Shown here piece by piece: positions 44,901-62,469 of a stretch of 64,000 nt of DNA. The DNA lies in IMG/VR virus record IMGVR_UViG_3300030419_008158, positions 220,430 through 284,429 of that record. The stretch is one strand, 5' to 3'. Position 1 is the stretch's first letter, and each line of letters begins with the position of its first letter. The notes beneath the pieces are model-generated. The model was not told the DNA's origin and did no database searches. It saw only the letters and a program-made list of their open reading frames with translations. A program made the position numbers and the translations under genes.

Positions 44901-45314
44901 GTATGGATTGGTTCCGACAAGGTTAGTAGCTGTATTTATCAACTCTTGGCCGGCCACAAAACCTGCATTATTTACTCTGCCCTGATTTTCTCCTGACTCT
45001 AGACGGCTTTTACAGTCTCCGGCGCCCAAAGTTCGAAAATAGACAACAGATGTTCCGTTGTTCTTGAAATATCTATCAGCTGCCAGCATGCCATAGTGAT
45101 CATTAGTAAGAGCTTCCGCTGTTGACCCGAAAACCTTTTCAAAATCACCAATAGACGCGATATCAAAAGGAACAAAAGCAGGCCCTTGTACTGCTGTACC
45201 AACTATTGCAGCAGGTGGGGGATTATTTCCAGGTTGGGCCAGCACTGTAGTCGCATTAACTGCCACAGTATTTGAAACGACATCAGGAAATTTTGGTGTT
45301 TTGTTTTTCGACAT
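41970..45314 (-). CDS. Contractile tail sheath protein
   Basis: IVGTAVQGPAFVP...FEKVFG; AAYFPD; APMGYTRG; INPI; RVNIRRLL. Confidence 0.85.
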   Translation of the reverse strand: MSKNKTPKFPDVVSNTVAVNATTVLAQPGNNPPPAAIVGTAVQGPAFVPFDIASIGDFEKVFGSTAEALTNDHYGMLAADRYFKNNGTSVVYFRTLGAGDCKSRLESGENQGRVNNAGFVAGQELINTATNLVGTNPYAGSLGPPGRAYFLAAMMSESNGSTFFSDAGLQTVGENKSVPIVRGVLFSPSGVNLSLNLHLSNYNEPSETSFGEYGVAADGSALDGGSGVGSVYGLKQQTSTFVLVLNGHTSTTENPSAITASFSMQGSYNDLAVSGLSDASLPNGKSEADSMYFPNVFNRDPYKIQEAGHYLYTYYDIPDTFAVVTGSGVITDTLALGSSTWDGTEPIGLLLTSSLSRNAGSATNTAENTIGVPNFENFEDRFSGAFSPFVMSQKIGSRRFDLFRLRSFSDGEGSRNYKFIVSNIVPGSQTEDGYASFDIEVYSSTDPLYTQTALHTFANCSLNPSSLNFISNVVGDRHSFYDFDADVRGRKTVVVGNSLLQTQLVRVEVSKDVLNDRVPKDAVPSGFRGIHHLVTSGSSTSILTGSFGRQASLGVTNAATYEGLMPSVDDLRRTVQPPLPMRNRLSTGAPGVSSLSLTNSDNIPWGTRYERIGTPSAGPVLTQQSDHTSLNLLEFFPSFHTTFQNPWVGDNHGTADVGGTVLDADRYNNNMFTLERIAVITGSSNPIPKDPNALLPDYAEWPAAVYIRNGKLPSSLYRTNPPDTTDKVRFIDPAEDLKDDLCRKFLKFCVPMLGGFDGLNLFDEEGKKMSDTSIYRERYDTNISGKSASSTAAYNAAINILKEKSEADMSVFAVPGIRHRAVIDTALEAAQSKFDCLFISDIEQYDSGIEYVTTGSSDSVDLSQTVTKFVNRTVDNSFGAAYFPDVKIGFDLTTPVIKSVPPTVAALGVIARSDDLASPHAAPMGYTRGRVLGGNSADITFSNSDKQFLIDANINPIIDDMTNVEGLAGEDENLSGVCVISQSTMLDQESSLGRVNIRRLLITVRRNVRNIARGILFAKNNSAVIEVFRRRVHQYLSGLKGSGHIDSFEISILPTYRPPTTTNIQTNVDRFKPFGGLLNRSQDQETEAKTIRGAVMIRPVASDEMIKIDVDESI

Positions 45315-45368: not shown

Positions 45369-45773
45369 CTACTGACATGCGACTGTCAACATTTCATAAA
45401 CAGCCTTCCTTAGCACGTTGTCACTGTCGGTGTCAAGTACATCGCCCACCTCGAGCGCCAGTTCATCACACGTACCTAATGGGAGCTCCAGCACACTATG
45501 GACGTCATTGTCACATTGACTGTGTCCCGTGTGTGGATGCATCCGATCCTTTTTAAGTATGACTCCACCGGCGTCGAGGTAGAGGATATCAAGCGGAATA
45601 TGTGTGTTCCGCATATGAAATCTTGCAGGCCCTCCGGGCATCTTGAAAAGCATTCCAGTTCCGTCTGGCATATACTTTCGCCCACTAAGTCCCACAGCTC
45701 TTTCTTTAGGAGTTTCTGCTATCTCAACAGTAAATGGATAACCATGTATTTCGATTTGCTCGGTGTTCAACAT
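45369..45773 (-). CDS. DUF192 family protein
   Basis: VEIAETP.ER..GLSGR, GMLF, MRNTHIPLD, VLELP.G. Confidence 0.85.
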   Translation of the reverse strand: MLNTEQIEIHGYPFTVEIAETPKERAVGLSGRKYMPDGTGMLFKMPGGPARFHMRNTHIPLDILYLDAGGVILKKDRMHPHTGHSQCDNDVHSVLELPLGTCDELALEVGDVLDTDSDNVLRKAVYEMLTVACQ

Positions 45774-45774
45774 A

Positions 45775-46395
45775 TCAATAATACACGGCGCCGCTGATGT
45801 TAGCATCTGGATATTTCTTAGCCATTTTGTCTTTAAGGTGACCAATTTGAGGCTGCATCATCTTACCAAAGTGCACATAACCTCCATCCGGATCGACATA
45901 TCTTTGAAAAAACTCATCGACTAATTTACTGGCAATTTGTTCACCTCGGTGATCTTGACGTACATTCAAATAGTCTATATGCCACCTCGGGTTGCCGTCG
46001 GCTGCCTCGCCTTCTTGGTGGTAATCCAAAAATCCTATGATGCATGGATCTGACACGCCTGGATGATACTGACCTTTTCTCGGTTTTTTCAACCTTCGGC
46101 CGGATTTTCCGTACCTCTCCATTTCTTGATAGCCGGTAAAATATGCATCTTCATAATCAGGTAACTCTGTCACATCGGTTTCACAGTATGCCAAGCGTTT
46201 GCGATTTTTACTACCCCAGTATGCCAGAGGAGAATCTAGTTCCCGAAATACAATAGATTCGGCGAGAAGCTCTCTAATCAATGGTCTTAAAACTGTTTCC
46301 TGCATCACCTGGCCTTCAAGATCTTCCAGCACACTACGATTTATTGGTACATCTTGACGCTGCAGGCTGGTGAAGATTTGTGGCTCTTTTTGCAT
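45775..46395 (-). CDS. GNAT-fold protein with leader-like segment
   Basis: MQE|TVLRPLIRELLAE; IDYLNVRQDHRGEQIASKLV. Confidence 0.6.
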   Translation of the reverse strand: MQKEPQIFTSLQRQDVPINRSVLEDLEGQVMQETVLRPLIRELLAESIVFRELDSPLAYWGSKNRKRLAYCETDVTELPDYEDAYFTGYQEMERYGKSGRRLKKPRKGQYHPGVSDPCIIGFLDYHQEGEAADGNPRWHIDYLNVRQDHRGEQIASKLVDEFFQRYVDPDGGYVHFGKMMQPQIGHLKDKMAKKYPDANISGAVYY

Positions 46396-48339: not shown

Positions 48340-48816
48340 CTAGCGGATCTCTTTTGGTGCTCTTAGCAAAGACATGTTCGCTTCTTTGGGTGTTTTGCTA
48401 CCTTTCCTGGTGTTACATGGTGAACAACATAGAACAAGATTTGTCCACGTATCTCTTCCACCCCTAGACTTTGGTAAAACATGATCTACAGTTGATTTTG
48501 CAAATGACACAGGCTTGCAGCAATACTGGCATATTCCGTTGTCACGCTCAAAAATATTTTTACGATTTGGCTTTCTGGTTTTTGGAGGAACTTTTATTGC
48601 CCCTAAAAAAACTCCTTTTCGAAATCTAACAATGGATGGCATTGGCAAAAATCCACTCACTGTCCCAATTACCAGTTTGGGATGATTTTCGATCACTTCA
48701 AAACGACCAGTATGTACATCTTTTATAGCATCTTGCCATGTTGTTGTATACATTGGTTCGTACCCAGTGCTCAAGACCTCAACTGATTGCTTCGTATTAA
48801 GCAAATCACCTTCCAT
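48340..48816 (-). CDS. HNH endonuclease
   Basis: IFERD..CQYC, TVDHVLPKSRGG, W.NLV.CC..CN.RK. Confidence 0.9.
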   Translation of the reverse strand: MEGDLLNTKQSVEVLSTGYEPMYTTTWQDAIKDVHTGRFEVIENHPKLVIGTVSGFLPMPSIVRFRKGVFLGAIKVPPKTRKPNRKNIFERDNGICQYCCKPVSFAKSTVDHVLPKSRGGRDTWTNLVLCCSPCNTRKGSKTPKEANMSLLRAPKEIR

Positions 48817-48885
48817 ATAACTAAGTAACATTAGGTTCAAAACTAATATAATCAATTTGGATCGATTTTTCATCCGGAGAAAAAA

Positions 48886-49233
48886 TTGCAACTATTTTTT
48901 TTGATAGCAATCTTTGCTATTATGCACACCATTATATGGTACAGTACAAACTGGCAGCTAGTCAAAGGTGTTGACAAAAATAGCGCTCTTATGTTTGCTG
49001 TAGTTTTAGCAATTCCCATATCTTTGCTAGCTTTTTACGGAACTAAAATTGCTTATGAAGCATTTAGCAGCGCTTGGTCTGTAAGGCTTTTTGCGTTCGG
49101 GATGTCATATATTACTTTTCCAATTTTAACTTGGGTTATGCTAGACGAATCACCCTTCAATACAAAAACGATGATCTGCATATCGCTGTCTTTTATTATT
49201 ATTGCAGTGCAGCTGTTTTGGAGAAATACTTAG
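48886..49233 (+). CDS. Small 4-TM membrane protein (DMT-like)
   Basis: Four hydrophobic helices. Confidence 0.6.
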   Translation: MQLFFLIAIFAIMHTIIWYSTNWQLVKGVDKNSALMFAVVLAIPISLLAFYGTKIAYEAFSSAWSVRLFAFGMSYITFPILTWVMLDESPFNTKTMICISLSFIIIAVQLFWRNT

Positions 49234-50289: not shown

Positions 50290-50607
50290 CTAAAACGTGT
50301 TGTACTTAGCATGCCCAAATACTTCGCCAGTATCCGGATCTTGATAAATTGTAACACCGCCCGGAAAACTTCCGCCAGACCACTGTTGAAATCTTTCAAC
50401 TGTCTCTTCGGGAGACTCGCCCGGCTTTGACGACCAAATTTCATGCGTATCGGCGTAATATTTTCCGGCAAGTCTTTTTTTAAGATCGCTTACTTTGGCT
50501 TGAATGTCTGCTTTGAGAGCATAATTTACCTTGCTGCCTCTGATCGTTTGCTCTTTGTCGATCTGTTCCCTTATGAGGTCTCGGATCTGCTTCCTGGTTA
50601 TCTTCAT
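50290..50607 (-). CDS. Class B leader cargo protein
   Basis: MKITRKQIRDLIREQ. Confidence 0.75.
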   Translation of the reverse strand: MKITRKQIRDLIREQIDKEQTIRGSKVNYALKADIQAKVSDLKKRLAGKYYADTHEIWSSKPGESPEETVERFQQWSGGSFPGGVTIYQDPDTGEVFGHAKYNTF

Positions 50608-51173
50608 CCTCTCATCTCCCTTGCAGTTGATAATTGTTCTCCGGACTCTTCTGCCCCTTCAACATCTCCCTTATCAAGAGCTTTTTGACGTTGTGCTGAC
50701 AAGGACTTGACATTTTGGGCAGTCGCTTGCTGTGTCGCTGGTGTAGAATCACCCATATCGACATCTAGGCCCATGGTTCCCACTGTCTCGTAACCGCTTT
50801 CGTCGTCGGTGTCATCTTTTTTTTCTGGTGGAGTGTATCCAACAACCTGCTCTTTCAAAGACTCCCTAATAATTCTTCTAAGCTGCTTTCTTGTAATTTT
50901 CACTTTAGATATTTCCTCTATTTCGACAACTAAGTTTTTCTGGCCCTTTATGATTCTGTGATAAGTATTTTTTGGAATAAAGTAAGTTTCGCCAGGAATC
51001 ATTCTCCGCGGAATGTTGTTTTCTAGCTGCAGCTGCCAACCATCTCCATGGCAGACTTTAACATTTCGGTCCGATCGGTCCCTATGCCAGACCAACTCGT
51101 CAGAGTCGACATCGGCACTAAACTCTCTCACTAGAAGACCTCTTTCTTTTTTTTGTTGAAAAGGATGCTTCAC
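50604..51173 (-). CDS. Cupin-like domain + internal class B leader + acidic domain
   Basis: VWHRD...IPKNTYHRIIKG; IEE|ISKVKITRKQLRRIIRESLKE. Confidence 0.7.
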   Translation of the reverse strand: MKHPFQQKKERGLLVREFSADVDSDELVWHRDRSDRNVKVCHGDGWQLQLENNIPRRMIPGETYFIPKNTYHRIIKGQKNLVVEIEEISKVKITRKQLRRIIRESLKEQVVGYTPPEKKDDTDDESGYETVGTMGLDVDMGDSTPATQQATAQNVKSLSAQRQKALDKGDVEGAEESGEQLSTAREMRG

Positions 51174-51907
51174 TACCACCACCCTGCAATATCTCTTCCA
51201 AAAAACTTTGTAGCGCGACATGACCAGTACCCTGGTTTTGTTTTATCTTTTTTATCAGAACAGTTGTGACGATCACCAAAGCTTTTCCTGCGCTTTTTGT
51301 GTGCAGGGCTATCGCCCATGGCATCAGGCATTGAAGAACCGAATGGGACTTTTTTCACTCTTATGGTGCCGTCCTTGTTCTTTTTTCCGGAATTTACATA
51401 GACATACGCTTTGCCGCCCTCGCCTCCGCGCTTTGGCTTGTTGAGCTCAACCTTCTTACCTTTGTACTCTGCTTCGTTTATGTGCTCTTCGTTTCCTTCC
51501 ATGATTGGATAGTCTAAAGGGACAAGTTGGCCTTCGTATATTGCAAACTCACCGATGTCTAAATCTTCGAGAAGTTCGTACTCTTCTAAAGATTTCGGAT
51601 CATATGTCCCCTCATAAAAACGTTGGCGTGCCTCTCTAAACAGAGCAAAGAACTTTGTAGATCCAGGACGAAATATGTTTTGATCCACGCCCACACCTGC
51701 ATCTAGGTGATAAAGGATTGCTTCTTCTAGCGTTTCTTTATCATCCTCGTTAATCTTTTCGCAGTTAGGGACCCTCTTTCCGCCTTTGCCTTTTTTGGTT
51801 TTCTTTCCAGACTGTGCTCCCGGACTATAGCCAGCCCAACAGGTGTTCTCCACTTCTTCCAGGGTCTCCCGAATTAAAATTCGAAGCTGTGTTTCTGAAA
51901 TTTGCAT
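51173..51907 (-). CDS. Leader-bearing multi-module basic protein
   Basis: MQISETQLRILIRE; modules bounded by INE|; CWAGY..VPNC; RHNC..GYWSC. Confidence 0.75.
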   Translation of the reverse strand: MQISETQLRILIRETLEEVENTCWAGYSPGAQSGKKTKKGKGGKRVPNCEKINEDDKETLEEAILYHLDAGVGVDQNIFRPGSTKFFALFREARQRFYEGTYDPKSLEEYELLEDLDIGEFAIYEGQLVPLDYPIMEGNEEHINEAEYKGKKVELNKPKRGGEGGKAYVYVNSGKKNKDGTIRVKKVPFGSSMPDAMGDSPAHKKRRKSFGDRHNCSDKKDKTKPGYWSCRATKFFGRDIAGWW

Positions 51908-51926
51908 TACTTCTTCTTTTTAGCTT

Positions 51927-52388
51927 TTAGTTATTTTCATTTGGGAGCTCTTTAACAACTTTTTTCAATTCATAAAATGACATACTGAGATTGATGCCAT
52001 CAGAGCTTGTTTTGTCTGTCTTTAAAAGAGAGCCCTCTATTTCAAAACCATCAGAGCTTTGATATTCAACATACATTAACATAAGCAGACGTGCTGCTGT
52101 TAAGTTTTTTTCAGAGGCGTCTCCGGGCCAAATAACGACAAGCAAATCAGGGACATTCATGCAGTTTTTGTGCCGCATTACTTGTGCCGGAATTGGAAAT
52201 CTAAAAGGTGGTACTGTGTAAAACTCTTCAGGCTCGCTACACTTCTCTGCTAAGTTTTGTGCAGAAACATGGTCATGTTGTTGCTTCTTGATAACTTTAG
52301 TGGCTCCGCCGCATCCTGAACAGCTTGCAGCAAACATGAGAAGCACTCCCAAGAATATAAGTACAGTATTTTTTGCCTTTTTTATCAC
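51927..52388 (-). CDS. Lipoprotein-like protein
   Basis: Hydrophobic N-terminus ending AASC. Confidence 0.65.
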   Translation of the reverse strand: MIKKAKNTVLIFLGVLLMFAASCSGCGGATKVIKKQQHDHVSAQNLAEKCSEPEEFYTVPPFRFPIPAQVMRHKNCMNVPDLLVVIWPGDASEKNLTAARLLMLMYVEYQSSDGFEIEGSLLKTDKTSSDGINLSMSFYELKKVVKELPNENN

Positions 52389-53119
52389 GTGTAGTCTCCA
52401 TTTATAAGCTTGTCAGTAAACTCTTCCATGGTTTTGTAAGCTAGTTGTCGAACTCGACGAGTCAACTCATTCTCTAAATCAATAGCTGCATCATCGACCT
52501 GTGCTTTCCATACAGACTTTGCCTCAGCGGCTGTCTCGCCCATGGCCATCATGGAGGGATCGCCCTTGTCAAAAGCTTTGACTTCTGCATCGTGCCACTT
52601 GTCAACTAGTTCACCCACATCAGACCAGTCAACCCTAGGCCAGTGATGCCCATTTCTTCCAAGGCCAGCAGCTTCATCCTGCTCTGCAAGATTTTCTTTC
52701 TCTTCTCTAATGATTCGCCTAAGTTGACGTTTTGTAATTTTCATTGTACTTCCTTTGTATTTTCTTTCGTTTACAGGTGTTTTCTTGTCTTGAACGCCGT
52801 GACCTGCTGTGATTGGGTGTTCTCCTTCTCGGACGGATTCAAGTAGACCCACTGGGATGTTTGTCTCAACTGACCCATCTGACCACTTGATATCGTACAC
52901 CTCAATCTTTCCGTTTTTGTCCAACGAGTGCCACATTACCTTACCAATCTCTTCTAGAGCGGAATCCTTCCGCTTAACGTGAGTCAGTCACGTATGACCA
53001 ATGATGTCCTTTTCATCACTATCTAAATCTTTAACAGGCTCGAGCCCTGAACCGAAAGGCACAGACTTTTCTGCCTCTTCTCTAATCAGTCTTGCAAGTT
53101 GTTTCTTTGTAATTTTCAT
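52385..53119 (-). CDS. Candidate selenoprotein: class B leader, in-frame TGA (codon 44), His-rich domain, second leader, third module
   Basis: ATG 53119 MKITKKQLARLIREE...IIGHT-TGA(52990-52988)-LTHVK... in frame with the track ORF 52385..52936. Confidence 0.7.
52954..52977 (-). promoter_or_regulatory. Bacterial SECIS-like hairpin
   Basis: TTA-AGCGGAA-GGA-TTCCGCT-C-TAG; loop 20 nt 3' of UGA, starting with G. Confidence 0.65.
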
Positions 53120-53120
53120 C

Positions 53121-53897
53121 TTAATATCTTCCTCCGCGGTCAGCTGGGTGTACCCAGCTAGGATCTACTTCACCGTTTCCGAATAGTTTCGGACGATGAG
53201 CATCTATAGCAATAGAGTATTCGTCATTGCCCCAATCACGCAGAGTTTTGTCTTTGCGTGGGTCGTATCCATCGTCTCCCGGATACTGCCAATTTCCACT
53301 TTCAGGATCTTTGTGTCCCGGACGGCTTTCGGCGAGCAAAGCTTCACGGATCACTCGTCTTAGTTGCTTCTTGGAAACTTTTACTCTTTTGCCTTCTTGA
53401 AATCCGTCGACTGTTCTGGCATCATACTTTGACTTTAACCAGCTAGCTAGCTTTTCATTAATGTCTGGAATGTCATCCTCATCTGACAATCCTTCTAGAG
53501 AATCGAGAGCGACGTTAAGAAAGTTATCCTCGACCGTGTCATCCACAATAGCAGCGACTTCGTCATCGACGTTTAGTTTGTCAAGCATCGTATCAGTCTT
53601 CTTATCATCAGGAGCAGAATACATACTCTTTAACGTCTGTGCTAGAGACAAAGCAGTGCCAGCGCCTGGAACGATATCAGCCAAAGCCCCTATTCCGAGA
53701 TCCTTTAACCCTTCGATACCCAACTTCGCTCTTTTTTCGCTCTGTAGCGTCTTAATTATTTTTCGAAGATCCCCGACCTTTCTGATCTGAGGGTCTACAT
53801 CCATCTCGTCAGCTAAGCGCTCCCAGTTGATTTCGTTGAGGAAACGTGCCTTCTCTTCTCTGATGATTCGTCTTAGTTGTCTTTTTGTTACTTTCAC
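53121..53897 (-). CDS. Class B leader cargo polyprotein (two leaders)
   Basis: VKVTKRQLRRIIREE...FLNE; FQE|GKRVKVSKKQLRRVIRE; middle domain paralogous to the C-domain of 3128..4345. Confidence 0.75.
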   Translation of the reverse strand: MKVTKRQLRRIIREEKARFLNEINWERLADEMDVDPQIRKVGDLRKIIKTLQSEKRAKLGIEGLKDLGIGALADIVPGAGTALSLAQTLKSMYSAPDDKKTDTMLDKLNVDDEVAAIVDDTVEDNFLNVALDSLEGLSDEDDIPDINEKLASWLKSKYDARTVDGFQEGKRVKVSKKQLRRVIREALLAESRPGHKDPESGNWQYPGDDGYDPRKDKTLRDWGNDEYSIAIDAHRPKLFGNGEVDPSWVHPADRGGRY

Positions 53898-54601
53898 TAC
53901 CAGCTTCCTCCCTCGGATTTCGCATGATTGAAGCCCATAGACCACCACTCGTAATTTTCGTCCTCTGGCATTGTATCATAGCCAGCGCCTCCATGGCTGC
54001 CAGCCTCATAGCCCACATCAAACCAGGCTTGTTGGTTTTTGGTCAAGCCTCTCTTGGGATTATCACCATAATAAGATCCATACTCTTTGAGTGCATTACC
54101 CATAATTGCCATGGCAAATTTACGCGTTGCCAGCGACTCAAAGGGCACTATAGATTCAAGTAGCCTTGACTTTTCTTCTTTGATGATTCTTCTTAGCTGC
54201 TTCTTGGTAATCTTTATTTTTGATTCTCCCATCATAACAGCTCTTTCTGCTTGTTGCACTTTGATTTCATGGCTAATATCTGAAACCCTCAGACCAAATG
54301 CGTCAGCTATCATAACCTTGTATGCTTCTCGCTTTGGGTCCTCTACGATATAAGATGCCACAACGGAGGAAGCTGATGGCGTTATGTGTCCGTTCTCTTC
54401 TGCCCACGCTACATAGTCATCGACGGGATCAAACCCACCGTCGTCCTGAACTCCCCCTATAGGCGCGTCGCCGGTTGGGTTATCACGATATCGCTCGTAG
54501 TCTCCAGGAACAGTTGGGTCGTAAGGTCGTCCACCATACTCCTCGAGCCTGGCTTTCTCTTCTCTAATGATTCTTCTTAGCTGCTTCTTAGTAATCTTCA
54601 T
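53897..54601 (-). CDS. Class B leader cargo polyprotein (two leaders)
   Basis: MKITKKQLRRIIREE; MGE|SKIKITKKQLRRIIKEE. Confidence 0.75.
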   Translation of the reverse strand: MKITKKQLRRIIREEKARLEEYGGRPYDPTVPGDYERYRDNPTGDAPIGGVQDDGGFDPVDDYVAWAEENGHITPSASSVVASYIVEDPKREAYKVMIADAFGLRVSDISHEIKVQQAERAVMMGESKIKITKKQLRRIIKEEKSRLLESIVPFESLATRKFAMAIMGNALKEYGSYYGDNPKRGLTKNQQAWFDVGYEAGSHGGAGYDTMPEDENYEWWSMGFNHAKSEGGSW

Positions 54602-54974
54602 TTTCACCTCTTATCCAGGCACCTATCTCATAGGGAATCTGTTCACGAACCAGTGTGTCTAGACGTTGATATTTGTCTATTAGTTTGCGACTTGGCTTGC
54701 CCACAGCAGACATGTCATGAAGTGCTGCACTGAAAACCGCCTCTAAATCTCTAGCATCGGCCTCGTACCCATCATCAAGGAACATCTCAATCGCATATTG
54801 CATCTCATCAATGGCTGACTCACTGAATTCGCCATCATCTTCTACGCTGCTCAACCTAGCATCGGTATCTGGAAAGTATGTCTGCTTTATCTTGCCAGGT
54901 GCGCGTAACATCGGTGCTTCGCGGAGAAGTTCTTCTTTGATGATTCTTCTAAGCTGTCTCTTTGTGACTTTCAT
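54588..54974 (-). CDS. Class B leader cargo protein
   Basis: MKVTKRQLRRIIKEELLRE. Confidence 0.75.
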   Translation of the reverse strand: MKVTKRQLRRIIKEELLREAPMLRAPGKIKQTYFPDTDARLSSVEDDGEFSESAIDEMQYAIEMFLDDGYEADARDLEAVFSAALHDMSAVGKPSRKLIDKYQRLDTLVREQIPYEIGAWIRGENEDY

Positions 54975-55303
54975 GATCTGTCCTTGTGATTTGGGTTGAT
55001 GACGCCCGTGTAGATTATAAGGGCGCCCATGCCCGCTTTGTGGATTTCGGCGCCCATCATGCGCTCAGCTTCCGCAGCGATATCCGGATCGTTTGTAAAG
55101 AAAATTAGTTCGCCACTGGGTTCATACTCACCATGTAGATGATTGTGTTCAGCCCAATCCATCCATTGTTGTTCTGAAGTGGCTTGGCGTGAAGAAGGAG
55201 ACGCACCTAGTTTGTGACCGCCTACCGATGCTGCTCCATGGCCGGTGTAGCCCTTAACGATCTCAGATATAATGCCCCTAAGTTGTCGCTTCGTGATTTT
55301 CAT
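54971..55303 (-). CDS. Class B leader cargo protein
   Basis: MKITKRQLRGIISE. Confidence 0.75.
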   Translation of the reverse strand: MKITKRQLRGIISEIVKGYTGHGAASVGGHKLGASPSSRQATSEQQWMDWAEHNHLHGEYEPSGELIFFTNDPDIAAEAERMMGAEIHKAGMGALIIYTGVINPNHKDRS

Positions 55304-55569
55304 TCTGTATATTCCGGATGCTCTAAGGCTTCGATCGCTGCTATCACTGCGTTCATAGATTCCTTATTGCCTGTGTTTCTCGCTAAAATAGAAAGCGCTT
55401 TCTTTAGGTGCGGAAGCGCCTCCGCCGGGTCGTGCCCACCAAAAAAACCCTCGGTGTCCAGCCTGGCTAGCCGCCTAGCTTCATCACGCTCGGCAGGTGT
55501 TACTTCAGAAAGCAACCTGGACCTCTCTTCTTTGATGATTCTTCTAAGACGACTTTTTGAAATTTTCAT
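55300..55569 (-). CDS. Class B leader cargo protein
   Basis: MKISKSRLRRIIKEERSRLLSE. Confidence 0.75.
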   Translation of the reverse strand: MKISKSRLRRIIKEERSRLLSEVTPAERDEARRLARLDTEGFFGGHDPAEALPHLKKALSILARNTGNKESMNAVIAAIEALEHPEYTE

Positions 55570-55580
55570 TTTAGATGTCC

Positions 55581-55871
55581 CTAGTCCAAATCAGCTAACA
55601 TGTATCGATACCCTATACTGTCCAAGAATTCACCAAAAACTTCAGTAACAGCGGCTACAGCCATTTCTTCAGCCTCTTCTTCCATAAGACCTTCTTCAGC
55701 TATGAAGTCATTAACAGCGTTTGTGTATAGATGCGTCATTAATGTTTTAGATCTTTCAGCCATGTTGTTGTCTATAAGCCCTCGTCCTCTCTCGCCGAGC
55801 GTCATCTCACTAAGGAGGCTGGCCTTCTCTTCTTTGATGATTCTTCGCAGTTGTCGTTTGGTAATTTTCAT
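55581..55871 (-). CDS. Class B leader cargo protein
   Basis: MKITKRQLRRIIKEEKASLLSE. Confidence 0.75.
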   Translation of the reverse strand: MKITKRQLRRIIKEEKASLLSEMTLGERGRGLIDNNMAERSKTLMTHLYTNAVNDFIAEEGLMEEEAEEMAVAAVTEVFGEFLDSIGYRYMLADLD

Positions 55872-56071
55872 TTTTCTAGCCTCTTGACACGTTTCAAAAG
55901 TTTCTGGATCCTAATCTCAAGTCCCTTATTTCTCTTCTCCACGGATTCAACTTGCTGCTCAAGAGCGTTGAGCCTGTACTCAGTTCCGTAGTAGAAGCCA
56001 CCGAAAGTGACTGCCAACCCACCGAGAAGGACCAACATCTTAAGATCAAGTTTCATCATGGACATACCCAC
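55868..56071 (-). CDS. Small TM + coiled-coil protein
   Basis: TM helix then heptad repeat; no leader. Confidence 0.6.
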   Translation of the reverse strand: MGMSMMKLDLKMLVLLGGLAVTFGGFYYGTEYRLNALEQQVESVEKRNKGLEIRIQKLLKRVKRLEK

Positions 56072-56484
56072 TTAGCCATCCTTTGTTGCCAGTATGGCTC
56101 AACAGTCTTTCCTGTTCTTCGATCTTTGCAACCCATTTCCTCGCCGGTAGGCTTTTTGTCTGCCCTGCTGGTGTCTACCCGACCTGAAGTGTCTATACCG
56201 GGCGTCCAGTACTCCTCGAGATCATCTTCTTTAAGCAGCGGCGCTGTATGAGCTAGATCATCAATTAGGCCTTCGTAGTCTTGAACGACAGCAAAATGGC
56301 CTAGGTCATCCATAAAGTCATCGTACAGTAGATTTTTAATCGCGCCGGCGTCGCCCATGGAGGCCAGAGCGGGATCAGAATGATAAGAAGCTGCTCTATC
56401 TGTTAGATATCTTACAACTTCTTCATGAGAAGCTGTAGCAGCTTCGCGAATGATTCTTCTAAGCTGTCTCTTTGTAATTCTCAT
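56056..56484 (-). CDS. Class B leader cargo protein
   Basis: MRITKRQLRRIIRE at ATG 56484; GATATTTA motif at 56512. Confidence 0.75.
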   Translation of the reverse strand: MRITKRQLRRIIREAATASHEEVVRYLTDRAASYHSDPALASMGDAGAIKNLLYDDFMDDLGHFAVVQDYEGLIDDLAHTAPLLKEDDLEEYWTPGIDTSGRVDTSRADKKPTGEEMGCKDRRTGKTVEPYWQQRMAKWVCP

Positions 56485-56510
56485 ATACACTCCTTTGGGC
56501 ACACTCAACA

Positions 56511-57548
56511 CTAAATATCATCATGTCTGGCATTATGATTGGTCATTCTTTCTAAAACATTTTCTACGATTCGTGCCTCATAAATCTTCTCTCTCTTGAA
56601 CTGTTTTAGATTTTTTCTAATTTTTCTCTGGAGCTTTTTTGTAAACTTTTCTTCTGGGTACTCTTCGTAATACTCTTTAAAATTGTCAGCGACCCCTACG
56701 GACTTCGCTATTTTCTGCATTTTATCAATATCTTGAGATTCTACTGCTTCTAGAGCGCTATCTATGCCGTATGTCTGTGCCAACCGCTCAGCAAACTCAT
56801 GCCCAAAAGCATCAATTTCAATATGTGATCCCAAATAATCTCTTCTGGGTGCTCCTTCGAGTGGAATAAGGCCCCAATCTTCAAGTTTCTTTTTTGCTTC
56901 CCCGCGGGAAACTCCCATGTCCCTGGAGATTGATGTGTACTGTCGATCATGCATAAGCTCATGTCGGATAGTTGCTGATATATCTTGGGCTATTTTGACA
57001 GGTTCAATTAGATTCTTGTCAAAGCTTTCATCAGCTGTTACTGCAAATAAAAGAAGAACGCCTCTGTCGCGGCCATCTAGGGCCATTTGTGCGCCGACAA
57101 CAAAGCGATTTGGGTTTGAATTATTTTGCAGCTTATTAGACCCACCTTTAATTCCTGTCTGGTCGATGCTTACGACATTAACTTCAATGGGAAGCCCTAT
57201 TTCTTTAAAGAATAAATCTAACGTGTCATCAAGTGACTCTGCTGCGTCTGTTTGCTCGACGGCGCCTAGAAATTTAGAGCTGTGAATCTCTGTGTATTCA
57301 TTATCCTCTAGATAAAACTTAGACGTCAACAGTGCATTTTCAATTCCACCATAAACATCGCGGCGGAGCGGAAGAGATTGTTCTCCTATTAAATGCATCT
57401 TCTTGTAATAGTCAGAAATTTTACGCAAAAACTTAGAGTCGTACTCATTTTCATTCCCTTCTCTGTCCAAAAACAGAGAGGTGGAACTTGCCTGGTCATA
57501 AGGCTGGTTCGAACGCATTTTATATTTTCTGCGATTGCTCTTTTTCAT
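56511..57548 (-). CDS. HExxH metallopeptidase-like protein
   Basis: IRHELMHDRQ...YL..HIEIDA, similar to 8613..9341. Confidence 0.6.
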   Translation of the reverse strand: MKKSNRRKYKMRSNQPYDQASSTSLFLDREGNENEYDSKFLRKISDYYKKMHLIGEQSLPLRRDVYGGIENALLTSKFYLEDNEYTEIHSSKFLGAVEQTDAAESLDDTLDLFFKEIGLPIEVNVVSIDQTGIKGGSNKLQNNSNPNRFVVGAQMALDGRDRGVLLLFAVTADESFDKNLIEPVKIAQDISATIRHELMHDRQYTSISRDMGVSRGEAKKKLEDWGLIPLEGAPRRDYLGSHIEIDAFGHEFAERLAQTYGIDSALEAVESQDIDKMQKIAKSVGVADNFKEYYEEYPEEKFTKKLQRKIRKNLKQFKREKIYEARIVENVLERMTNHNARHDDI

Positions 57549-57578
57549 AGATAGCTTTTAGAAGGTTCTTGGGTATTT

Positions 57579-57884
57579 CTAAGAAGTACCGCTGACTTCT
57601 GCTGCTGCCTTCTTGAGCAAGGGAATTACTTTGATAATTTCATCTCCTTGATCTAGCAAGCCAAGAAAAAGATCTGCAATTACTTTGTTTTGCTTTGCAT
57701 TTCTACCGGGTCCTGCTTTCATAGCAGCTGAAAGTACTGACTTGTTTACGTCTTTTCCCAACCCAAGCTTTGTAATAATTTTTTGCAACTCATCGGTTGC
57801 TTCTTCATCTTGCTCTATCAGATTATTTTCTACAAGATATTTTCTGACAGAGTCACGTAATTTTTCTTCTGTAATAGCAGGCAT
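57579..57884 (-). CDS. Protein with degenerate leader
   Basis: MPAITEEKLRDSVRKYLVE; GGAGG RBS; GATATTTA motif at 57910. Confidence 0.65.
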   Translation of the reverse strand: MPAITEEKLRDSVRKYLVENNLIEQDEEATDELQKIITKLGLGKDVNKSVLSAAMKAGPGRNAKQNKVIADLFLGLLDQGDEIIKVIPLLKKAAAEVSGTS

Positions 57885-57915
57885 TTGTCCCCTCCGTGCA
57901 TTGTGATTGTAAATA

Positions 57916-58854
57916 TCATGCTGCGGCTTGAAAATTCTTCTTTTCAAAGTCGAACAAGTACTTAAATACAGCTTTCTCTTTTGCTTTGGCTTCCATGGCA
58001 ACATCTACTGACTTGCCGCAAGAATTAAAGGGTTTATAATAGTAATCAGAATGTGCTGCTACAGACCTACACGTAGGATCTTCATACTTTTTCTTGCTGT
58101 TTGAGTGATGACACATTGGCCTTATACCAGCAGGCCATGTATCGTAAGCCATCAGAAATGCCTCTTCGTAAGATGTATCCTGGGGCCCGCATTCAAAATG
58201 ATGCGAATCAAAAACAATCGGCACACCCAGGCGTTTGTATACTGAGTCGTATAGCATTTTAGTTGAGTACAAATTTGGCCTGTCGTCATTTTCGACAGTA
58301 AGTCGACTGCGAACATTTTCAGGAAGTTTTTCAAAATTTCGACACCATGTGTCTAAAGCTTTTTCTCTATCACCATACGAAGCACCAATGTGAATGTTAA
58401 TCTTGGCATTGTGATTCATGGGCATGCCCATCATGTCCATCTGATCGCCGTGAATGCTTAGATCTTTTACACAATTTGAAACTACATACTCTTTGGGAGA
58501 TGCCAGGCAATTGAAAGGTCCCGGATGAAAAGAAAGACGCTGGCCTGTTTTATGAGCAAAGTCTCCGACCTTTCTTAAATTTTCTCTAATTTGCTCAATA
58601 TTGGGAAGCTGGTGCCACTCATATTCGCTAGCCCAAGGAAATAAATTAGATGTAATTCGAAAAACTTCAAAGCCGTTTGCAGAATTCCACTCTAAGATAC
58701 GCAGAAGGTCTTCTGTGTTATCAAGAGCAAGTTTTGAGGTGTAACCTAAGCCCTTAGCTTTAAATGTCTTCTGCCTCATTGTACGACTTGTAAAGACACC
58801 TTCATTTTTTTGAAGCTCAAGATTAATACAACAGTATCCAAATCGATTCGACAT
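57916..58854 (-). CDS. uvsE: UV damage endonuclease UvsE/UVDE
   Basis: FGYCCIN, FRITS.LFPW, SFHPG, NIHIG, VENDD, VFDSHH, AHSDY, MEAKAKE. Confidence 0.9.
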   Translation of the reverse strand: MSNRFGYCCINLELQKNEGVFTSRTMRQKTFKAKGLGYTSKLALDNTEDLLRILEWNSANGFEVFRITSNLFPWASEYEWHQLPNIEQIRENLRKVGDFAHKTGQRLSFHPGPFNCLASPKEYVVSNCVKDLSIHGDQMDMMGMPMNHNAKINIHIGASYGDREKALDTWCRNFEKLPENVRSRLTVENDDRPNLYSTKMLYDSVYKRLGVPIVFDSHHFECGPQDTSYEEAFLMAYDTWPAGIRPMCHHSNSKKKYEDPTCRSVAAHSDYYYKPFNSCGKSVDVAMEAKAKEKAVFKYLFDFEKKNFQAAA

Positions 58855-58935
58855 GTCCTTGCTCCTTGTAGGTACTTCAGAATTATATCATACTTAGTCT
58901 AAACAATACACAAAACTGGCAAAACAGACGAAGAA

Positions 58936-59205
58936 ATGAAAACAAAAATCAAAATTTTACTGTCGACTTTATTTATATTTTTTCTTAGTATTACAGTCAC
59001 TTCAAGTACTCATGCAAAACCGCCAAGAGCAACAAAATCAAAATTTTATGATTTCAGTGAACAACTAATTGATGGGCAAATAAAAAAACCCACCAACCTC
59101 TATATTGACACTAGGTCCAAAGTTAAATTTGAGAGGCTACTTCGACTCAAGAAATCTTTCTTGCCTAAACTATTTGACACTGCAAGAGAAAAGGTGTTCA
59201 AGTAG
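58936..59205 (+). CDS. Secreted protein resembling myxobacterial gliding protein CglF/GltF
   Basis: Signal peptide, then YDFSEQLIDGQIKKP...Y...R.K.KF..L..L..SFLPKL. Confidence 0.55.
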   Translation: MKTKIKILLSTLFIFFLSITVTSSTHAKPPRATKSKFYDFSEQLIDGQIKKPTNLYIDTRSKVKFERLLRLKKSFLPKLFDTAREKVFK

Positions 59206-59323
59206 GCTATTTTCTGCGTTTTTTGATCAAATTTGAAATAGCACAATAACACACAAAGTCAATGACAACTCCGAGCACTACACACCCAGCTAACACAGCT
59301 AATAATGACATATAATATTTTCT

Positions 59324-59944
59324 CTAGTCGTAGTACGAAGTTGTTCTCTTGACTGACTTGCGGCGCTTTCTCAAAGTTGCGCCGCCCTTCTCTAACACCT
59401 TGATAACCTTGTCGATAGTTGTTCCGGCCGCTTTTGCGCCCCTTTCGTCTACTACGAAGGTTGAATGACCTAAAGGCATTGTGCCCCACGGGGTTTCACT
59501 ATCTTCAATTTGGAAAGCTACAATCTTGCCACCCCTGCGAATAGGCTGGTAGGTCAAGTACGCTACCTCACGATCCTCGAGGCCGTCATCTATTGCTTTG
59601 AGTTCTTTTATGTTGGGCGACTTAGAAATGTTTGCTTTTCGCTCGGTGTCTTGTGCATCGGTGATCGCATAGCTGATAAGTTCAAGATCCGGGTATGGTG
59701 TAACCCCTAAGTCTGCAAGTGTGCCCCTGTCGTCTTCGTAAAAAGCATCTGCCTGATCTAAACCGTACTCGTCAATAAAAACCTGCGCAACTTTTTTGTG
59801 GTCAGCATTGCTCATTTTTGAAGGGTCTTTCGGGAGCGCAGCAACAAGCTTTTTCTCCCATGCATCCATCTCAGCCTGGCGTTCTTTCCAGGATTTTACT
59901 TGTTCTTTGATGATTCTTCTTAGATGGTTCTTAGTAACTCTCAT
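59324..59944 (-). CDS. Class B leader cargo protein
   Basis: MRVTKNHLRRIIKEQ. Confidence 0.75.
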   Translation of the reverse strand: MRVTKNHLRRIIKEQVKSWKERQAEMDAWEKKLVAALPKDPSKMSNADHKKVAQVFIDEYGLDQADAFYEDDRGTLADLGVTPYPDLELISYAITDAQDTERKANISKSPNIKELKAIDDGLEDREVAYLTYQPIRRGGKIVAFQIEDSETPWGTMPLGHSTFVVDERGAKAAGTTIDKVIKVLEKGGATLRKRRKSVKRTTSYYD

Positions 59945-60215
59945 AATCTAACACCCTCAAAACTTCTCGATGATCATCGTCAGTAATGTCATTTTTAGAC
60001 AGCTCTTCGATTATTGCTCTAATAACTGATCTTGCACCCAGCTTTCTAATTGCACTAACATACGCATCCTCAACGTCGATCTGCTTGAATTCTTCTCTTG
60101 GTTGGAATTTACCTCCACCTATAGCACCCATGATATCAGGTATGTCGGGCTGTTCCATAAGCTTAGCCTTCTCTTCTTTGATGATTCTTCTTAGTTGTCT
60201 TTTTGTGATTTTCAT
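59931..60215 (-). CDS. Class B leader cargo protein
   Basis: MKITKRQLRRIIKEEKAKLME. Confidence 0.75.
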   Translation of the reverse strand: MKITKRQLRRIIKEEKAKLMEQPDIPDIMGAIGGGKFQPREEFKQIDVEDAYVSAIRKLGARSVIRAIIEELSKNDITDDDHREVLRVLDYESY

Positions 60216-60589
60216 TAGAATCTCCACCCTGCGTCTGGTGACCATGATACTGGTATCTCAACATAGCCACTCGCCATTTGCTTTTCTATCTTGTCAATCA
60301 TAGCGTCACCAAGAGCACCAGGAACCCTTTGGCCGGATGCGATGTAAAGTGCGCTAGGCACAAAGTCAAGCTCTGTCTCGCCTCCACTCACTAGAAGGGA
60401 ATCGCCAGTGGGGCTCAATGTTATCGTGGTCTTGTAGCCCCGCTTCGAAGTTTGCTGGCTCCTTCCGAGGTACTTGTTTCCTGCCGCGGCAGGTTGTGCT
60501 TCAAACGAATCACCAGGTATCATACGGATGGGCTCATCATCCATGGCTTCTATAATGATTCTTCTAAGTTGTCTTTTTGTGATTTTCAT
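60215..60589 (-). CDS. Class B leader cargo protein
   Basis: MKITKRQLRRIIIE. Confidence 0.75.
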   Translation of the reverse strand: MKITKRQLRRIIIEAMDDEPIRMIPGDSFEAQPAAAGNKYLGRSQQTSKRGYKTTITLSPTGDSLLVSGGETELDFVPSALYIASGQRVPGALGDAMIDKIEKQMASGYVEIPVSWSPDAGWRF

Positions 60590-60915
60590 TAGTATCTCCC
60601 CGGGGCTCTGTAGCTTGACTTCTGCTTAGAATACAGGTCGTGAATCTGTTGATATACGTCAAGAGGCCAGTTGATTGCCTGACCGCTGTCATCTCGGTAT
60701 CCACCGCTGTGAATCTCGACCTCTTCTTTCATGTCAGCAGCATCACCTTCGAATTCGTAGAACGCTGTAGACAAAGCATCTGTGACACCGCCGTAAGATC
60801 TGGTTACGCCGAGCTTCTTAAGCATTGTCTTGAGACCACGTGGGTCGACACCTTCGTTCAACAGACTGATTTCTTCCTTGATGATTCTTCTTAGTTGTCT
60901 TTCTGTGATTTTCAT
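60589..60915 (-). CDS. Class B leader cargo protein
   Basis: MKITERQLRRIIKEEISLLNE. Confidence 0.75.
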   Translation of the reverse strand: MKITERQLRRIIKEEISLLNEGVDPRGLKTMLKKLGVTRSYGGVTDALSTAFYEFEGDAADMKEEVEIHSGGYRDDSGQAINWPLDVYQQIHDLYSKQKSSYRAPGRY

Positions 60916-60920
60916 AGTTT

Positions 60921-61142
60921 TTACCTTTTCGTGCCTTCTATTTCATCAGCAATATCTCGAAGTGCACTAGCTTTTTCATTCGAACGTCTAAGTCCGTAGT
61001 GTGCTAATAAAATAAAAATAGCCTTAGTAAGACCAAGCGTCAGCAATGAAGACAAATCTTCTTTCAGCAGTGTATCTGGCATTTGTTTGTCTTTGACACT
61101 TTCTGCAATAATTTTTCTCAGCTGTGATCTAGTAATCTTCAC
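60921..61142 (-). CDS. Class B leader cargo protein
   Basis: GTG 61142 VKITRSQLRKIIAE. Confidence 0.7.
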   Translation of the reverse strand: MKITRSQLRKIIAESVKDKQMPDTLLKEDLSSLLTLGLTKAIFILLAHYGLRRSNEKASALRDIADEIEGTKR

Positions 61143-61350
61143 CGACACCCCTTTTATTTTCAGCAAACGGAACAAACTCTCCTTTGCAATTGTAAATTCC
61201 CCACTTCTTGCTGTAGACTTTCTTGATAATTCTATTCAGCTTTTTCGCTGACAAGCTGTTCTTTTTAGATGCTTTTTGTTTGGGATCAATTCCTGCCCAC
61301 TTGTAATGTTCCGCTGGAATATTGATCGGAGATATCTTTTCAACTTTCAC
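61129..61350 (-). CDS. Small basic protein with degenerate internal leader
   Basis: LSAKKLNRIIKK. Confidence 0.55.
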   Translation of the reverse strand: MKVEKISPINIPAEHYKWAGIDPKQKASKKNSLSAKKLNRIIKKVYSKKWGIYNCKGEFVPFAENKRGVGEDY

Positions 61351-61589: not shown

Positions 61590-61590
61590 T

Positions 61591-62466: not shown

Positions 62467-62469
62467 AAA

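What the first reader, a model, noticed from the sequence alone, without database searches (positions are those of the whole stretch)
52385..53119. Candidate phage-encoded selenoprotein (in-frame UGA + SECIS) hidden from the ORF caller
Seen: a normal class B leader with a GGAGG RBS starts at 53119 and reaches TGA at codon 44 (52990-52988) in G-H-T-[TGA]-L-T-H. The frame then stays open for 200 more codons. A hairpin AGCGGAA-GGA-TTCCGCT follows, extendable by TTA/TAG, with its loop 20 nt after the UGA and starting with G. Established: bacterial SECIS elements lie immediately 3' of UGA with an apical-loop G at about this distance. TGA is a normal stop elsewhere in this window, so this is not genome-wide recoding. 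From memory (unverified), related phage proteins have H-x-C-x-x-H here, which would make a Cys/Sec pair. Inference: a His/Sec metal- or redox-active virion module that depends on host SelAB/tRNA-Sec. It could also be a selenium-dependent switch for making the downstream second-leader module.
Basis: partly seen in the sequence, partly recalled or inferred. Interest (0 to 1): 0.9.

Follow-up and report, generated by a model that had tools for sequence, protein, structure and literature searches.

The report
Phage-encoded selenoprotein candidate with SECIS hairpin
A gene of an uncultured 284-kb marine phage carries one in-frame UGA followed by a conserved RNA hairpin, a pattern kept in more than 100 related phage sequences while distant relatives have cysteine there, so it is very probably a selenocysteine-containing protein, a kind I found no published example of in phages.

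Summary
An ORF on the minus strand starts at 53119 and meets TGA at 52990-52988. The frame then stays open for 200 codons, and a 7-bp hairpin with loop GGA begins 13 nt after the TGA.

Comparative data turn this into a strong case for recoding.
- All 105 related viral and metagenomic loci have TGA at this codon, never TAA or TAG. The real terminal stop of the same ORFs varies freely.
- Amino acids on both sides are under strong purifying selection in one frame (pN/pS 0.06-0.08).
- Half of the relatives have no start codon downstream of the TGA.
- Synonymous sites inside the hairpin are frozen, and three stem pairs show compensatory changes.
- Four divergent subfamilies have unrelated hairpin sequences at the same distance, each with G in the first two loop bases.
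- Distant homologues, including cultured cyanophage proteins, have Cys at exactly this position and, in the three examined, no hairpin.
- TGA is an ordinary stop elsewhere in the window.

The best reading is a new selenoprotein family with an H-x-U-x-x-H motif on a small beta-barrel domain, read by a bacterial-type SECIS.

Not shown: the host, the Sec machinery, actual selenium insertion, or the function. The "virion module" and "selenium switch" ideas are not supported.

The parts
53131..53135 (-). Shine-Dalgarno-like GGAGG, 11 nt upstream of the start codon
   Evidence: Read directly from the sequence.
52991..53119 (-). N-terminal piece of 43 codons. It holds the leader MKITKKQLARLIREE, then ...DEKDIIGHT, and ends just before the UGA.
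   Evidence: Gene callers report it as a separate 43-aa ORF, also in relatives. Codons -6..-1 have pN/pS 0.08.
52988..52990 (-). In-frame TGA, the proposed selenocysteine codon, followed by C
   Evidence: TGA in 105 of 105 homologous loci and in 86 of 86 distinct contexts. It aligns with Cys in P0209 and other Cys forms. The next base is C in 74 of 76 sequences, against 0 of 24 ordinary TGA stops in the window.
52958..52974 (-). SECIS-like hairpin: 5' arm AGCGGAA (52974-52968), loop GGA (52967-52965), 3' arm TTCCGCT (52964-52958)
   Evidence: 96.8% of cells are paired, 3 pairs show compensatory change, and 0 of 500 shuffles reach the score. RNAalifold finds the same stem. Synonymous sites are frozen. 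Analogous hairpins occur in other subfamilies. The three Cys forms examined have none.
52745..52987 (-). Sec-domain body of 81 codons after the UGA: LTHVKRKDSALEEIGKVMWHSLD...NERKYKGST, a small beta-barrel with invariant His residues
   Evidence: Alignments A1 and A3. HMM search. AF2 model of the Cys homologue. Codons +1..+4 have pN/pS 0.064.
52749..52755 (-). AAGGAAG, a possible internal Shine-Dalgarno, 4 nt before the second module's ATG
   Evidence: Read from the sequence. Its function is inferred only.
52388..52744 (-). Second leader module of 119 codons (MKITKRQLRRIIREE...HHWPRVDW...INGDYT), fused in frame. In most relatives it is a free-standing gene.
   Evidence: P0002 is this module called alone, and about 100 homologues are 111-135 aa long. 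One search shows the fusion only in the window's clade.
52385..52387 (-). Terminal stop TGA, immediately followed by TAA. It overlaps the GTG start of the next ORF.

Best explanation
**What it is.** The region encodes one protein, not two. Ribosomes start at 53119. At the UGA (52990-52988) a fraction of them insert selenocysteine. The 7-bp hairpin that starts 13 nt downstream acts as a bacterial-type SECIS and recruits SelB.GTP.Sec-tRNA(Sec) of the infected cell, or an unseen phage copy.

**Product in this phage.** It is 244 residues long: leader, ...IIGH-T-U-L-T-H..., a small Tudor/SH3-like beta-barrel, then a second leader module fused in frame. In most relatives the product is a free-standing protein of about 135 aa.

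**The Sec site.** Sec sits in an H-x-U-x-x-H strand. Further His residues are invariant or nearly so in the Sec-type members: the H of WHSL and a C-terminal H-x-H or H-G. The most likely role is a His/Sec metal-binding or redox centre.

**What is shown:**
- translation through the UGA in frame;
- an RNA-level constraint on the hairpin;
- the Sec/Cys pairing.

**What is inferred:**
- that the inserted residue is Sec;
- that SelB is used;
- the metal or redox function.
For: 1. TGA occurs at the same codon in 105 of 105 loci from viral and metagenome collections. It also occurs in the divergent members L112, L113, L120-L122 and L249. The ORF's true terminal stop varies: TAA 42, TGA 21, TAG 17.
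2. Both sides are coding in the same frame. pN/pS is 0.08 just upstream and 0.064 just downstream, with abundant synonymous change.
3. 36 of 76 distinct sequences have no ATG, GTG or TTG between the TGA and the conserved W19.
4. In hairpin codons +5..+10, synonymous change is suppressed. AAG occurs 71/71 and 77/77 and GAT 67/67, although nearby Lys codons are mostly AAA. pS drops to 0.2.
5. The stem covaries: C-G to A-U in 11 sequences, A-U to G-C in 5, and 96.8% of cells are paired. No shuffle of 500 reaches the score and the slid controls collapse. RNAalifold agrees.
6. Four other subfamilies carry unrelated hairpins whose loops start 18-20 nt after the UGA, each with G in the first two loop bases: GUU, AGUU, GUC, CGUGA.
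7. The yardstick, the SECIS of E. coli fdhF, has UGA-C, 18 nt to the loop, and loop GGUC.
8. Cys aligns exactly with the UGA in 9 metagenomic homologues. H-x-C is present in the four cultured cyanophage homologues read, out of 105 phage records that match. The three Cys genes examined lack the hairpin. The cyanophages' hosts, cyanobacteria, lack Sec use according to PMC9312934.
9. TGA is an ordinary stop in the window (24 of 84 ORFs) and in relatives (58 of 221).
Against: - No Sec machinery was seen. There is no tRNA-Sec among the 8 tRNAs of the window or in the flanks of relatives.
- 220 kb of the contig could not be read, and the host is unknown.
- No Rfam SECIS model matches, though those models represent bacterial SECIS poorly.
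- The family spans phages of 30-50% G+C yet mostly keeps one hairpin sequence. That is odd if many different host SelB proteins must recognise it.
- The triloop closed by A-U pairs is smaller than the fdhF loop.
- Neither selenium incorporation nor the protein product was observed.
- No structure match supports the functional guess.
Confidence: 0.77

Rival explanations
1. Programmed stop-codon read-through without selenium. A near-cognate tRNA such as tRNA-Trp, or a phage suppressor tRNA, reads the weak UGA-C context. The hairpin stimulates this, as in the Qbeta A1 protein. The result is a short and a long product in a fixed ratio.
For: UGA-C is used at the site in 74 of 76 sequences and never at the 24 ordinary TGA stops in the window. 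No Sec machinery was found. Translation through the UGA is shown, but the identity of the inserted residue is not.
Against: Homologues without the UGA have Cys there, never Trp. Every 'W' in public protein calls that was checked at the DNA level is a TGA translated with another code. The place and loop composition of the hairpin match the SECIS of fdhF and are kept across unrelated hairpin sequences. No suppressor tRNA lies in the window.
Confidence: 0.12
2. An ordinary stop. A 43-aa leader peptide gene is followed by a separate gene that starts at ATG 52936, and the hairpin is a regulatory or processing element between them.
For: This is how gene callers annotate it. In the window's clade an ATG (the M of VMWHSL) with a nearby AAGG motif exists.
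Against: Most relatives have Leu or Val in place of that Met, and 36 of 76 have no start codon at all before W19. The 18 codons between the TGA and W19 are conserved as amino acids with synonymous variation. The stop is always TGA, although terminal stops of the same ORFs vary. No terminator-like or promoter-like site is found.
Confidence: 0.03
3. Alternative genetic code or stage-specific stop-codon reassignment of TGA in these phages.
For: Some public gene callers translated these contigs with TGA as Trp.
Against: TGA ends 24 of 84 ORFs in the window and 58 of 221 in relatives, mostly in ATGA overlaps with the next start. Only one site per genome region shows the in-frame pattern.
Confidence: 0.03
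4. A pseudogene, nonsense mutation or sequencing error in this contig.
For: None beyond the bare presence of a stop in an ORF.
Against: The same TGA occurs in more than 100 independent assemblies from many samples, with purifying selection on both sides.
Confidence: 0.01

Closest known systems
Bacterial selenoprotein genes with an intragenic SECIS, for example E. coli fdhF
   Same: An in-frame UGA followed by C. A hairpin lies directly downstream inside the coding sequence. The loop starts 18-20 nt after the UGA and begins with G (fdhF: 18 nt, GGUC). Cys-containing homologues exist.
   Different: It is encoded by a phage. The protein family and its H-x-U-x-x-H context do not appear in the published family table or in the supplements searched. 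The loop is a triloop, GGN. No selABCD genes were seen.
Marine metagenomic selenoprotein families (Zhang and Gladyshev, Sargasso Sea and GOS; PMC1088965, PMC2398784)
   Same: The source environment is the same. So are the criteria: a TGA/Cys pair plus a SECIS-like hairpin with G in a small apical loop.
   Different: This family's motifs are absent from those papers' supplementary sequence files as held. Here Sec forms outnumber Cys forms, whereas those screens required Cys homologues to make up the majority. Those surveys treat the families as bacterial. This one is viral and was not found in 185,579 bacterial and archaeal genomes.
Cys-containing homologues in cultured T4-like cyanophages (Kyanoviridae): P-SSM7 PSSM7_192, S-CAM3 T040910_181, S-SSM2 CPLG_00127, S-PRM1 AXN58486
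   Same: The domain is homologous (tblastn 5e-8; hhalign 96%). H-x-C lies at the position of H-x-U, and the H(T/D)L...YDV...HEH features are shared.
   Different: They have Cys (TGT or TGC) and no UGA. The +3 His is Lys. An extra Cys lies before the second His. The domain is often the C-terminal part of 400-690 aa proteins. The hosts (cyanobacteria) are reported not to use Sec. All are annotated only as hypothetical or 'possible cytitidyltransferase'.
Selenoproteins of eukaryotic viruses, such as the glutathione peroxidase homologues of poxviruses (from my own knowledge; 'viral selenoproteins' are reviewed in PMC6769590)
   Same: A virus encodes a selenoprotein and depends on the host's Sec machinery.
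   Different: Those use a eukaryotic 3'-UTR SECIS and are captured host enzymes. This one uses a bacterial-type intragenic hairpin and has no cellular homologue that I could find.
Tudor/Agenet/SH3-like small beta-barrels
   Same: The family profile hits repeat proteins whose repeats are Pfam Tudor_5 or Agenet. The AF2 model has a five-stranded core. The weak Foldseek hits are SAWADEE/Tudor, SH3 and CAP-Gly domains.
   Different: No structural match is significant (best E = 0.46). The His/Sec strand at the N-terminus has no counterpart in those families.
Qbeta A1-type UGA read-through and T4 gene 60 bypass (from my own knowledge)
   Same: A phage stop codon with a nearby hairpin that does not end translation.
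   Different: The codons directly after the UGA are translated in frame, so there is no bypass. The Cys/UGA pairing points to Sec rather than Trp.

Membership tests
Bacterial-type selenoprotein gene (UGA + SECIS) | An in-frame UGA conserved among homologues and never exchanged for TAA or TAG | tested here: met
   TGA in 105 of 105 loci and in 86 of 86 distinct contexts. Terminal stops of the same ORFs vary: TAA 42, TGA 21, TAG 17.
Bacterial-type selenoprotein gene (UGA + SECIS) | Protein-coding constraint in one frame on both sides of the UGA | tested here: met
   pN/pS is 0.08 upstream and 0.064 downstream. 36 of 76 sequences lack any downstream start codon.
Bacterial-type selenoprotein gene (UGA + SECIS) | A stem-loop immediately 3' of the UGA, with a small apical loop containing G at a fixed distance. 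The bSECIS model range of about 16-37 nt is from my memory of Zhang and Gladyshev 2005. [quoted passage not shown] | tested here: met
   20 nt to loop GGA in the window. 18-20 nt in four other subfamilies, each with G in the first two loop bases. fdhF control: 18 nt, GGUC.
Bacterial-type selenoprotein gene (UGA + SECIS) | The hairpin is maintained by selection on the RNA (covariation, suppressed synonymous change) | tested here: met
   3 pairs with compensatory change, 96.8% of cells paired, 0 of 500 shuffles reach the score. Codons +5..+10 are frozen.
Bacterial-type selenoprotein gene (UGA + SECIS) | Cys-containing homologues align with the UGA | tested here: met
   P0186, P0197, P0198, P0209, P0215, P0228 and P0231-233, plus cyanophage proteins. 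The three Cys genes examined have no hairpin.
Bacterial-type selenoprotein gene (UGA + SECIS) | selA, selB, selC and selD available in the host or the phage | not testable with these tools
   The host is unknown and only 64 of 284 kb are visible. No tRNA-Sec in the window or flanks.
Bacterial-type selenoprotein gene (UGA + SECIS) | Selenium is actually incorporated at the UGA | not testable with these tools
   This needs 75Se labelling or mass spectrometry.
Rfam SECIS families | A match to a curated SECIS covariance model | tested here: not met
   No match up to E = 10 in 52800-53150. According to the preprint read, these models represent bacterial SECIS elements poorly, so this does not weigh much against the SECIS reading.
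Tudor/SH3-like beta-barrel fold | A five-stranded small barrel with significant sequence or structure similarity to known members | tested here: inconclusive
   AF2 core has pLDDT 82-97 and five strands. The profile hits Tudor_5/Agenet repeat proteins. Foldseek's best E is 0.46. Pfam gives no hit for the domain itself.
Genome-wide TGA reassignment (code 4 or 25, recoded phages) | TGA is frequent inside genes and not used as a terminator | tested here: not met
   24 of 84 ORFs in the window and 58 of 221 in relatives end in TGA, mostly in ATGA overlaps.

The most novel reading that the evidence does not exclude
This would be the first family of selenoproteins encoded by bacteriophages.

- It is widespread in uncultured marine myophages, on contigs of up to 382 kb.
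- Sec replaces the Cys found in cyanophage relatives, within a His-rich putative metal or redox site.
- Phages would therefore tap the host's selenocysteine machinery.
- The Sec/Cys state of this gene could report whether the host uses selenium.
Probability: 0.7. Interest if true: 0.85.

Novelty: new variant of a known kind. Interest (0 to 1): 0.82.

Why it matters
- **No published precedent found.** The searchable literature holds no description of a phage selenoprotein. Reviews of prokaryotic selenoproteomes do not mention phages. Surveys of marine trace-element use found few or no viral sequences among the known selenoprotein families.
- **Recoding in phages.** If confirmed, the family would show that phages exploit the host's UGA-recoding machinery.
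- **A host marker.** The gene would be Sec in phages of selenium-using hosts and Cys in cyanophages.
- **A new Sec context.** H-x-U-x-x-H on a small barrel could be a compact new metal or redox site.
- **An annotation artefact.** Gene callers split these genes or translate them with TGA = Trp. Public protein sets therefore hold dozens of wrong 'W' versions and truncated halves.

Tried and rejected
- **Phage isolates.** blastn and tblastn of the region against 50,697 phage records found nothing for the Sec form.
- **Protein families.** Pfam and PHROGs gave no family for either piece. A PDB sequence search gave nothing. Foldseek against the PDB gave no significant hit.
- **Rfam.** No SECIS or other family matches at the site.
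- **Cellular genomes.** The scan of bacterial and archaeal genomes with the family profile returned no locus.
- **tRNA-Sec.** ARAGORN on the window and 21 loci found none.
- **Longer lower helix.** A helix that would pair the bases right after the UGA is only 83% paired with little covariation, so I do not claim it.
- **Explanations rejected.** Sequencing error, an ordinary stop plus re-initiation, translational bypass and genome-wide recoding are all rejected; the reasons are in the full report.
- Structure was modelled on a natural Cys homologue instead.

Full report
**1. What is in the sequence.**

All features lie on the minus strand.
- GGAGG is at 53135-53131 and the ATG at 53119.
- The ORF begins with the leader MKITKKQLARLIREE and reaches ...DIIGHT.
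- TGA follows at 52990-52988 (codon 44).
- The same frame continues LTHVKRKDSALEEIGKVMWHSLD... for 200 codons, to TGA-TAA at 52387-52382.
- After 81 of these codons a second leader (MKITKRQLRRIIREE, ATG at 52744) begins in frame.
- Thirteen nt after the TGA lies AGCGGAA-GGA-TTCCGCT (52974-52958).

The ORF list shows the region split into a 43-aa ORF and a 183-aa ORF.

The window is the last 64 kb of a 284-kb IMG/VR contig. It has 42% G+C, a tail-sheath gene, a tmRNA and 8 tRNAs, none of them tRNA-Sec.

**2. TGA is a normal stop here.**

Of 84 non-overlapping ORFs on the coding strand, 24 end in TGA. Most sit in ATGA overlaps with the next start, and reading through them gives short extensions of at most 46 codons. 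None of those 24 is followed by C.

On the coding strand only three TGAs have open frames on both sides. Only 52990 also has a stable hairpin. The same holds in the flanks of relatives, where 58 of 221 ORFs end in TGA, 43 of them in ATGA overlaps.

**3. The UGA is conserved and is translated through.**

I searched only with the pieces on either side of the stop. Together, 17 viral loci and 80 metagenome loci plus the loci fetched earlier give 105 loci that encode the downstream domain. Every one has TGA at the same codon. There are 77 distinct 120-nt versions and 86 distinct protein contexts.
- The ORF's real terminal stop varies: TAA 42, TGA 21, TAG 17.
- The upstream part is 42-359 residues long and begins with the leader.
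- In most relatives the Met of VMWHSL is Leu or Val.
- 36 of 76 distinct sequences have no ATG, GTG or TTG anywhere between the TGA and the invariant Trp 19 codons later.
- Those codons are nevertheless conserved as amino acids while their third positions vary freely.
- pN/pS is 0.08 for codons -6..-1 and 0.064 for +1..+4.

This excludes a sequencing error, a pseudogene, an ordinary stop with re-initiation, and a bypass of the codons after the stop.

**4. The hairpin is an RNA element.**

In an alignment of 75 distinct sequences the stem is paired in 96.8% of cells. Three pairs show compensatory double changes:
- C-G to A-U in 11 sequences;
- A-U to G-C in 5;
- one further outer pair.

No shuffle of 500 reaches the covariation score, and sliding the partner by 1-3 columns collapses the pairing to 37-60%. 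RNAalifold predicts the same 7-bp stem.

One compensatory change forces an amino-acid change: CGG to AGG is silent, and its partner turns Ala into Ser.

The six codons that form the hairpin (K-R-K-D-S-A) have almost no synonymous variation. AAG occurs 71/71 and 77/77 and GAT 67/67, while nearby Lys codons are mostly AAA. pS falls from 0.5-0.95 to 0.2. The third loop base varies (A, G or C) and changes the amino acid (D, G or A), while the two G's are invariant.

A longer lower helix is not supported. The hairpin has no T-run, and no terminator-like or promoter-like site is found. On its own its stability is unremarkable (z = -2.05).

**5. Independent hairpins in divergent subfamilies.**

An exhaustive profile search of 1.84 billion proteins found 117 relatives. 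Five divergent ones were read at the DNA level. All have TGA at the aligned position.

Four of them carry a hairpin of unrelated sequence at the same place:
- AGUGGAA-GUU-UUCCGCU;
- AAAGCUG-AGUU-CAGCUUU;
- AAGUUGAA-GUC-UUCAACUU;
- GUACAC-CGUGA-GUGUAC.

The loops start 18-20 nt after the UGA, and each has G in the first two loop bases. With the same script, the validated SECIS of E. coli fdhF gives UGA-C, 18 nt and loop GGUC.

**6. The Sec/Cys pair.**

In public protein sets the aligned residue falls into three classes:
- 'W' in 47 proteins;
- 'C' in 9 proteins;
- absent in 83 proteins, because the call starts downstream.

Every 'W' that I checked is a TGA translated with another code.

The nine Cys proteins read H-S-C-A-S-H, H-N-C-A-T-H, H-D-C-P-K-H and similar. 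BLASTP and MAFFT place the Cys exactly at the UGA. Their codons are TGT or TGC, and the three genes examined have no hairpin downstream.

The Cys form P0209 also matches 105 records of cultured T4-like cyanophages. The four read (P-SSM7, S-CAM3, S-SSM2, S-PRM1) have H-x-C at the site and the same downstream features. A review states that cyanobacteria lack Sec use (PMC9312934). That fits Cys in their phages, although the correlation rests on few data.

**7. What the protein is.**

No Pfam, PHROG or PDB sequence match exists.

An AlphaFold model of the natural Cys homologue, built on an alignment of Cys forms and post-UGA pieces, has a confident core (residues 22-84, pLDDT 82-97). The core has five beta-strands, and the first strand carries H-x-C-x-x-H.

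Foldseek gives no significant match. The best weak hits are SAWADEE/Tudor, SH3 and CAP-Gly barrels. The family profile also hits long proteins made of Tudor_5/Agenet repeats.

In the alignment of Cys forms and post-UGA pieces, the His at +3, the His of W-H-S-L and a C-terminal His are invariant. The His at -2 is present in every Sec-type and Cys-type member read. The +3 His is Lys in the cyanophage forms.

I infer a His/Sec metal-binding or redox site. This is an inference from the residue pattern only.

**8. The second module, and the 'switch' and 'virion' ideas.**

The module after the second leader is a free-standing gene of about 120 aa in roughly 100 relatives. Only the window's own clade, about 5 of 86 contexts, has a module fused behind the Sec domain, and the fused modules differ. 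The module has its own ATG, preceded by AAGGAAG. A selenium-dependent switch is therefore not a general property and is not needed to make that module.

Neighbours in the window are DUF192, GNAT, HNH, UvdE and methyltransferase genes. One relative lies next to gp13- and gp15-like neck genes. A virion location is possible but not shown.

**9. What is missing.**
- The host is unknown.
- No phage isolate carries the Sec form, and no bacterial or archaeal genome carries the family.
- The nearest isolates for neighbouring structural genes are Microcystis phage Mel-JY01 and Flavobacterium phage immuto, at 25-35% identity.
- No Sec machinery was seen, but 220 kb of the contig could not be read.
- A preprint reports that Pelagibacter lacks selC while Actinomarina has the full machinery. 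Host identity therefore matters.
- The family spans 30-50% G+C yet mostly keeps one hairpin sequence, which I cannot explain.

**10. Novelty.**
- Full-text searches found no description of a phage selenoprotein and no trace of this motif.
- The supplementary sequence files of the Sargasso and GOS selenoproteome papers do not contain it.
- The published table of prokaryotic selenoprotein families lists no H-x-U family.
- One paper notes predicted tRNA-Sec genes in huge phages but no selenoprotein.

The mechanism is the known bacterial one. The new elements are the carrier (phages), the protein family and the Sec context.

**Verdict.**

I put the selenoprotein reading at about 0.77, its main rival (selenium-independent read-through) at about 0.12, and interest at 0.82.

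Noticed in passing
window 50290-63943 and 6486, minus strand: At least 19 copies of a basic N-terminal leader (consensus MKITKRQLRRIIKEE) head a large family of small genes. Five copies are internal to longer ORFs (leader motif at 54214, 53381, 52741 and 50900, plus 53894 near an ORF start). This gives 'double-leader' ORFs with no stop between modules. I found no Pfam or PHROG family and no literature trace. Cys-homologue loci carry leader proteins too.
   Followed up: partly
window 11466-11829, minus strand: A phage-encoded one-piece tmRNA (Rfam 103.9 bits) with tag peptide ANDNVEYDYALAA. Eight tRNA genes lie at 12333-28045: Ser, Thr, Lys x2, Gly, Met, Arg, Leu. None is tRNA-Sec or a suppressor.
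   Followed up: no
window 41970-45314, minus strand: A 1114-aa protein whose last ~350 residues match tail sheath (PHROG 23). The long N-terminal part has no match. The nearest isolates are only 24-27% identical (Rhodothermus phage RM378, Microcystis phage Mel-JY01, a 484-kb uncultured phage).
   Followed up: partly
window, all 24 TGA-terminated ORFs on the minus strand: Ordinary TGA stops are followed by A, T or G and never by C (0 of 24). The recoded TGA is followed by C in 74 of 76 family members.
   Followed up: partly
public protein sets: P0109-P0121, P0127, P0135 and others: Dozens of database proteins of this family show 'W' at the Sec site, and sometimes a run-on past a terminal TGA (P0114 ends ...KKWK). 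The contigs were translated with TGA = Trp. Other calls are truncated halves. These are annotation artefacts.
   Followed up: yes
L246 1345-1746 (Prochlorococcus phage P-SSM7, PSSM7_192): The cyanophage Cys homologue is annotated 'possible cytitidyltransferase'. This is apparently only because it follows a cytidylyltransferase gene. In S-CAM3, S-SSM2 and S-PRM1 the domain is the C-terminal part of 405-690 aa hypothetical proteins at the same genomic position.
   Followed up: partly
L019 and L021 (3001 onward), P0119-P0121: Some family members carry a C-terminal tail made of a poly-Lys run, then an aromatic and Gly/Asp-rich low-complexity stretch (...YPYVFGYGYH...GGDFGDFGGG...). Its meaning is unknown.
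   Followed up: no
window 57916-58854, 48340-48891, 45369-46395, 36851-38113: A UvdE UV-damage endonuclease (Pfam 181.6 bits), an HNH endonuclease, DUF192 and GNAT genes, and an RNA ligase-like gene are interspersed with the leader gene family.
   Followed up: no
P0138 (2515 aa), P0148, P0161 (5112 aa), P0214: The profile of the Sec domain also hits very long proteins built of many Tudor_5/Agenet-like repeats. This suggests a distant link between this phage domain and Tudor-like barrels.
   Followed up: partly
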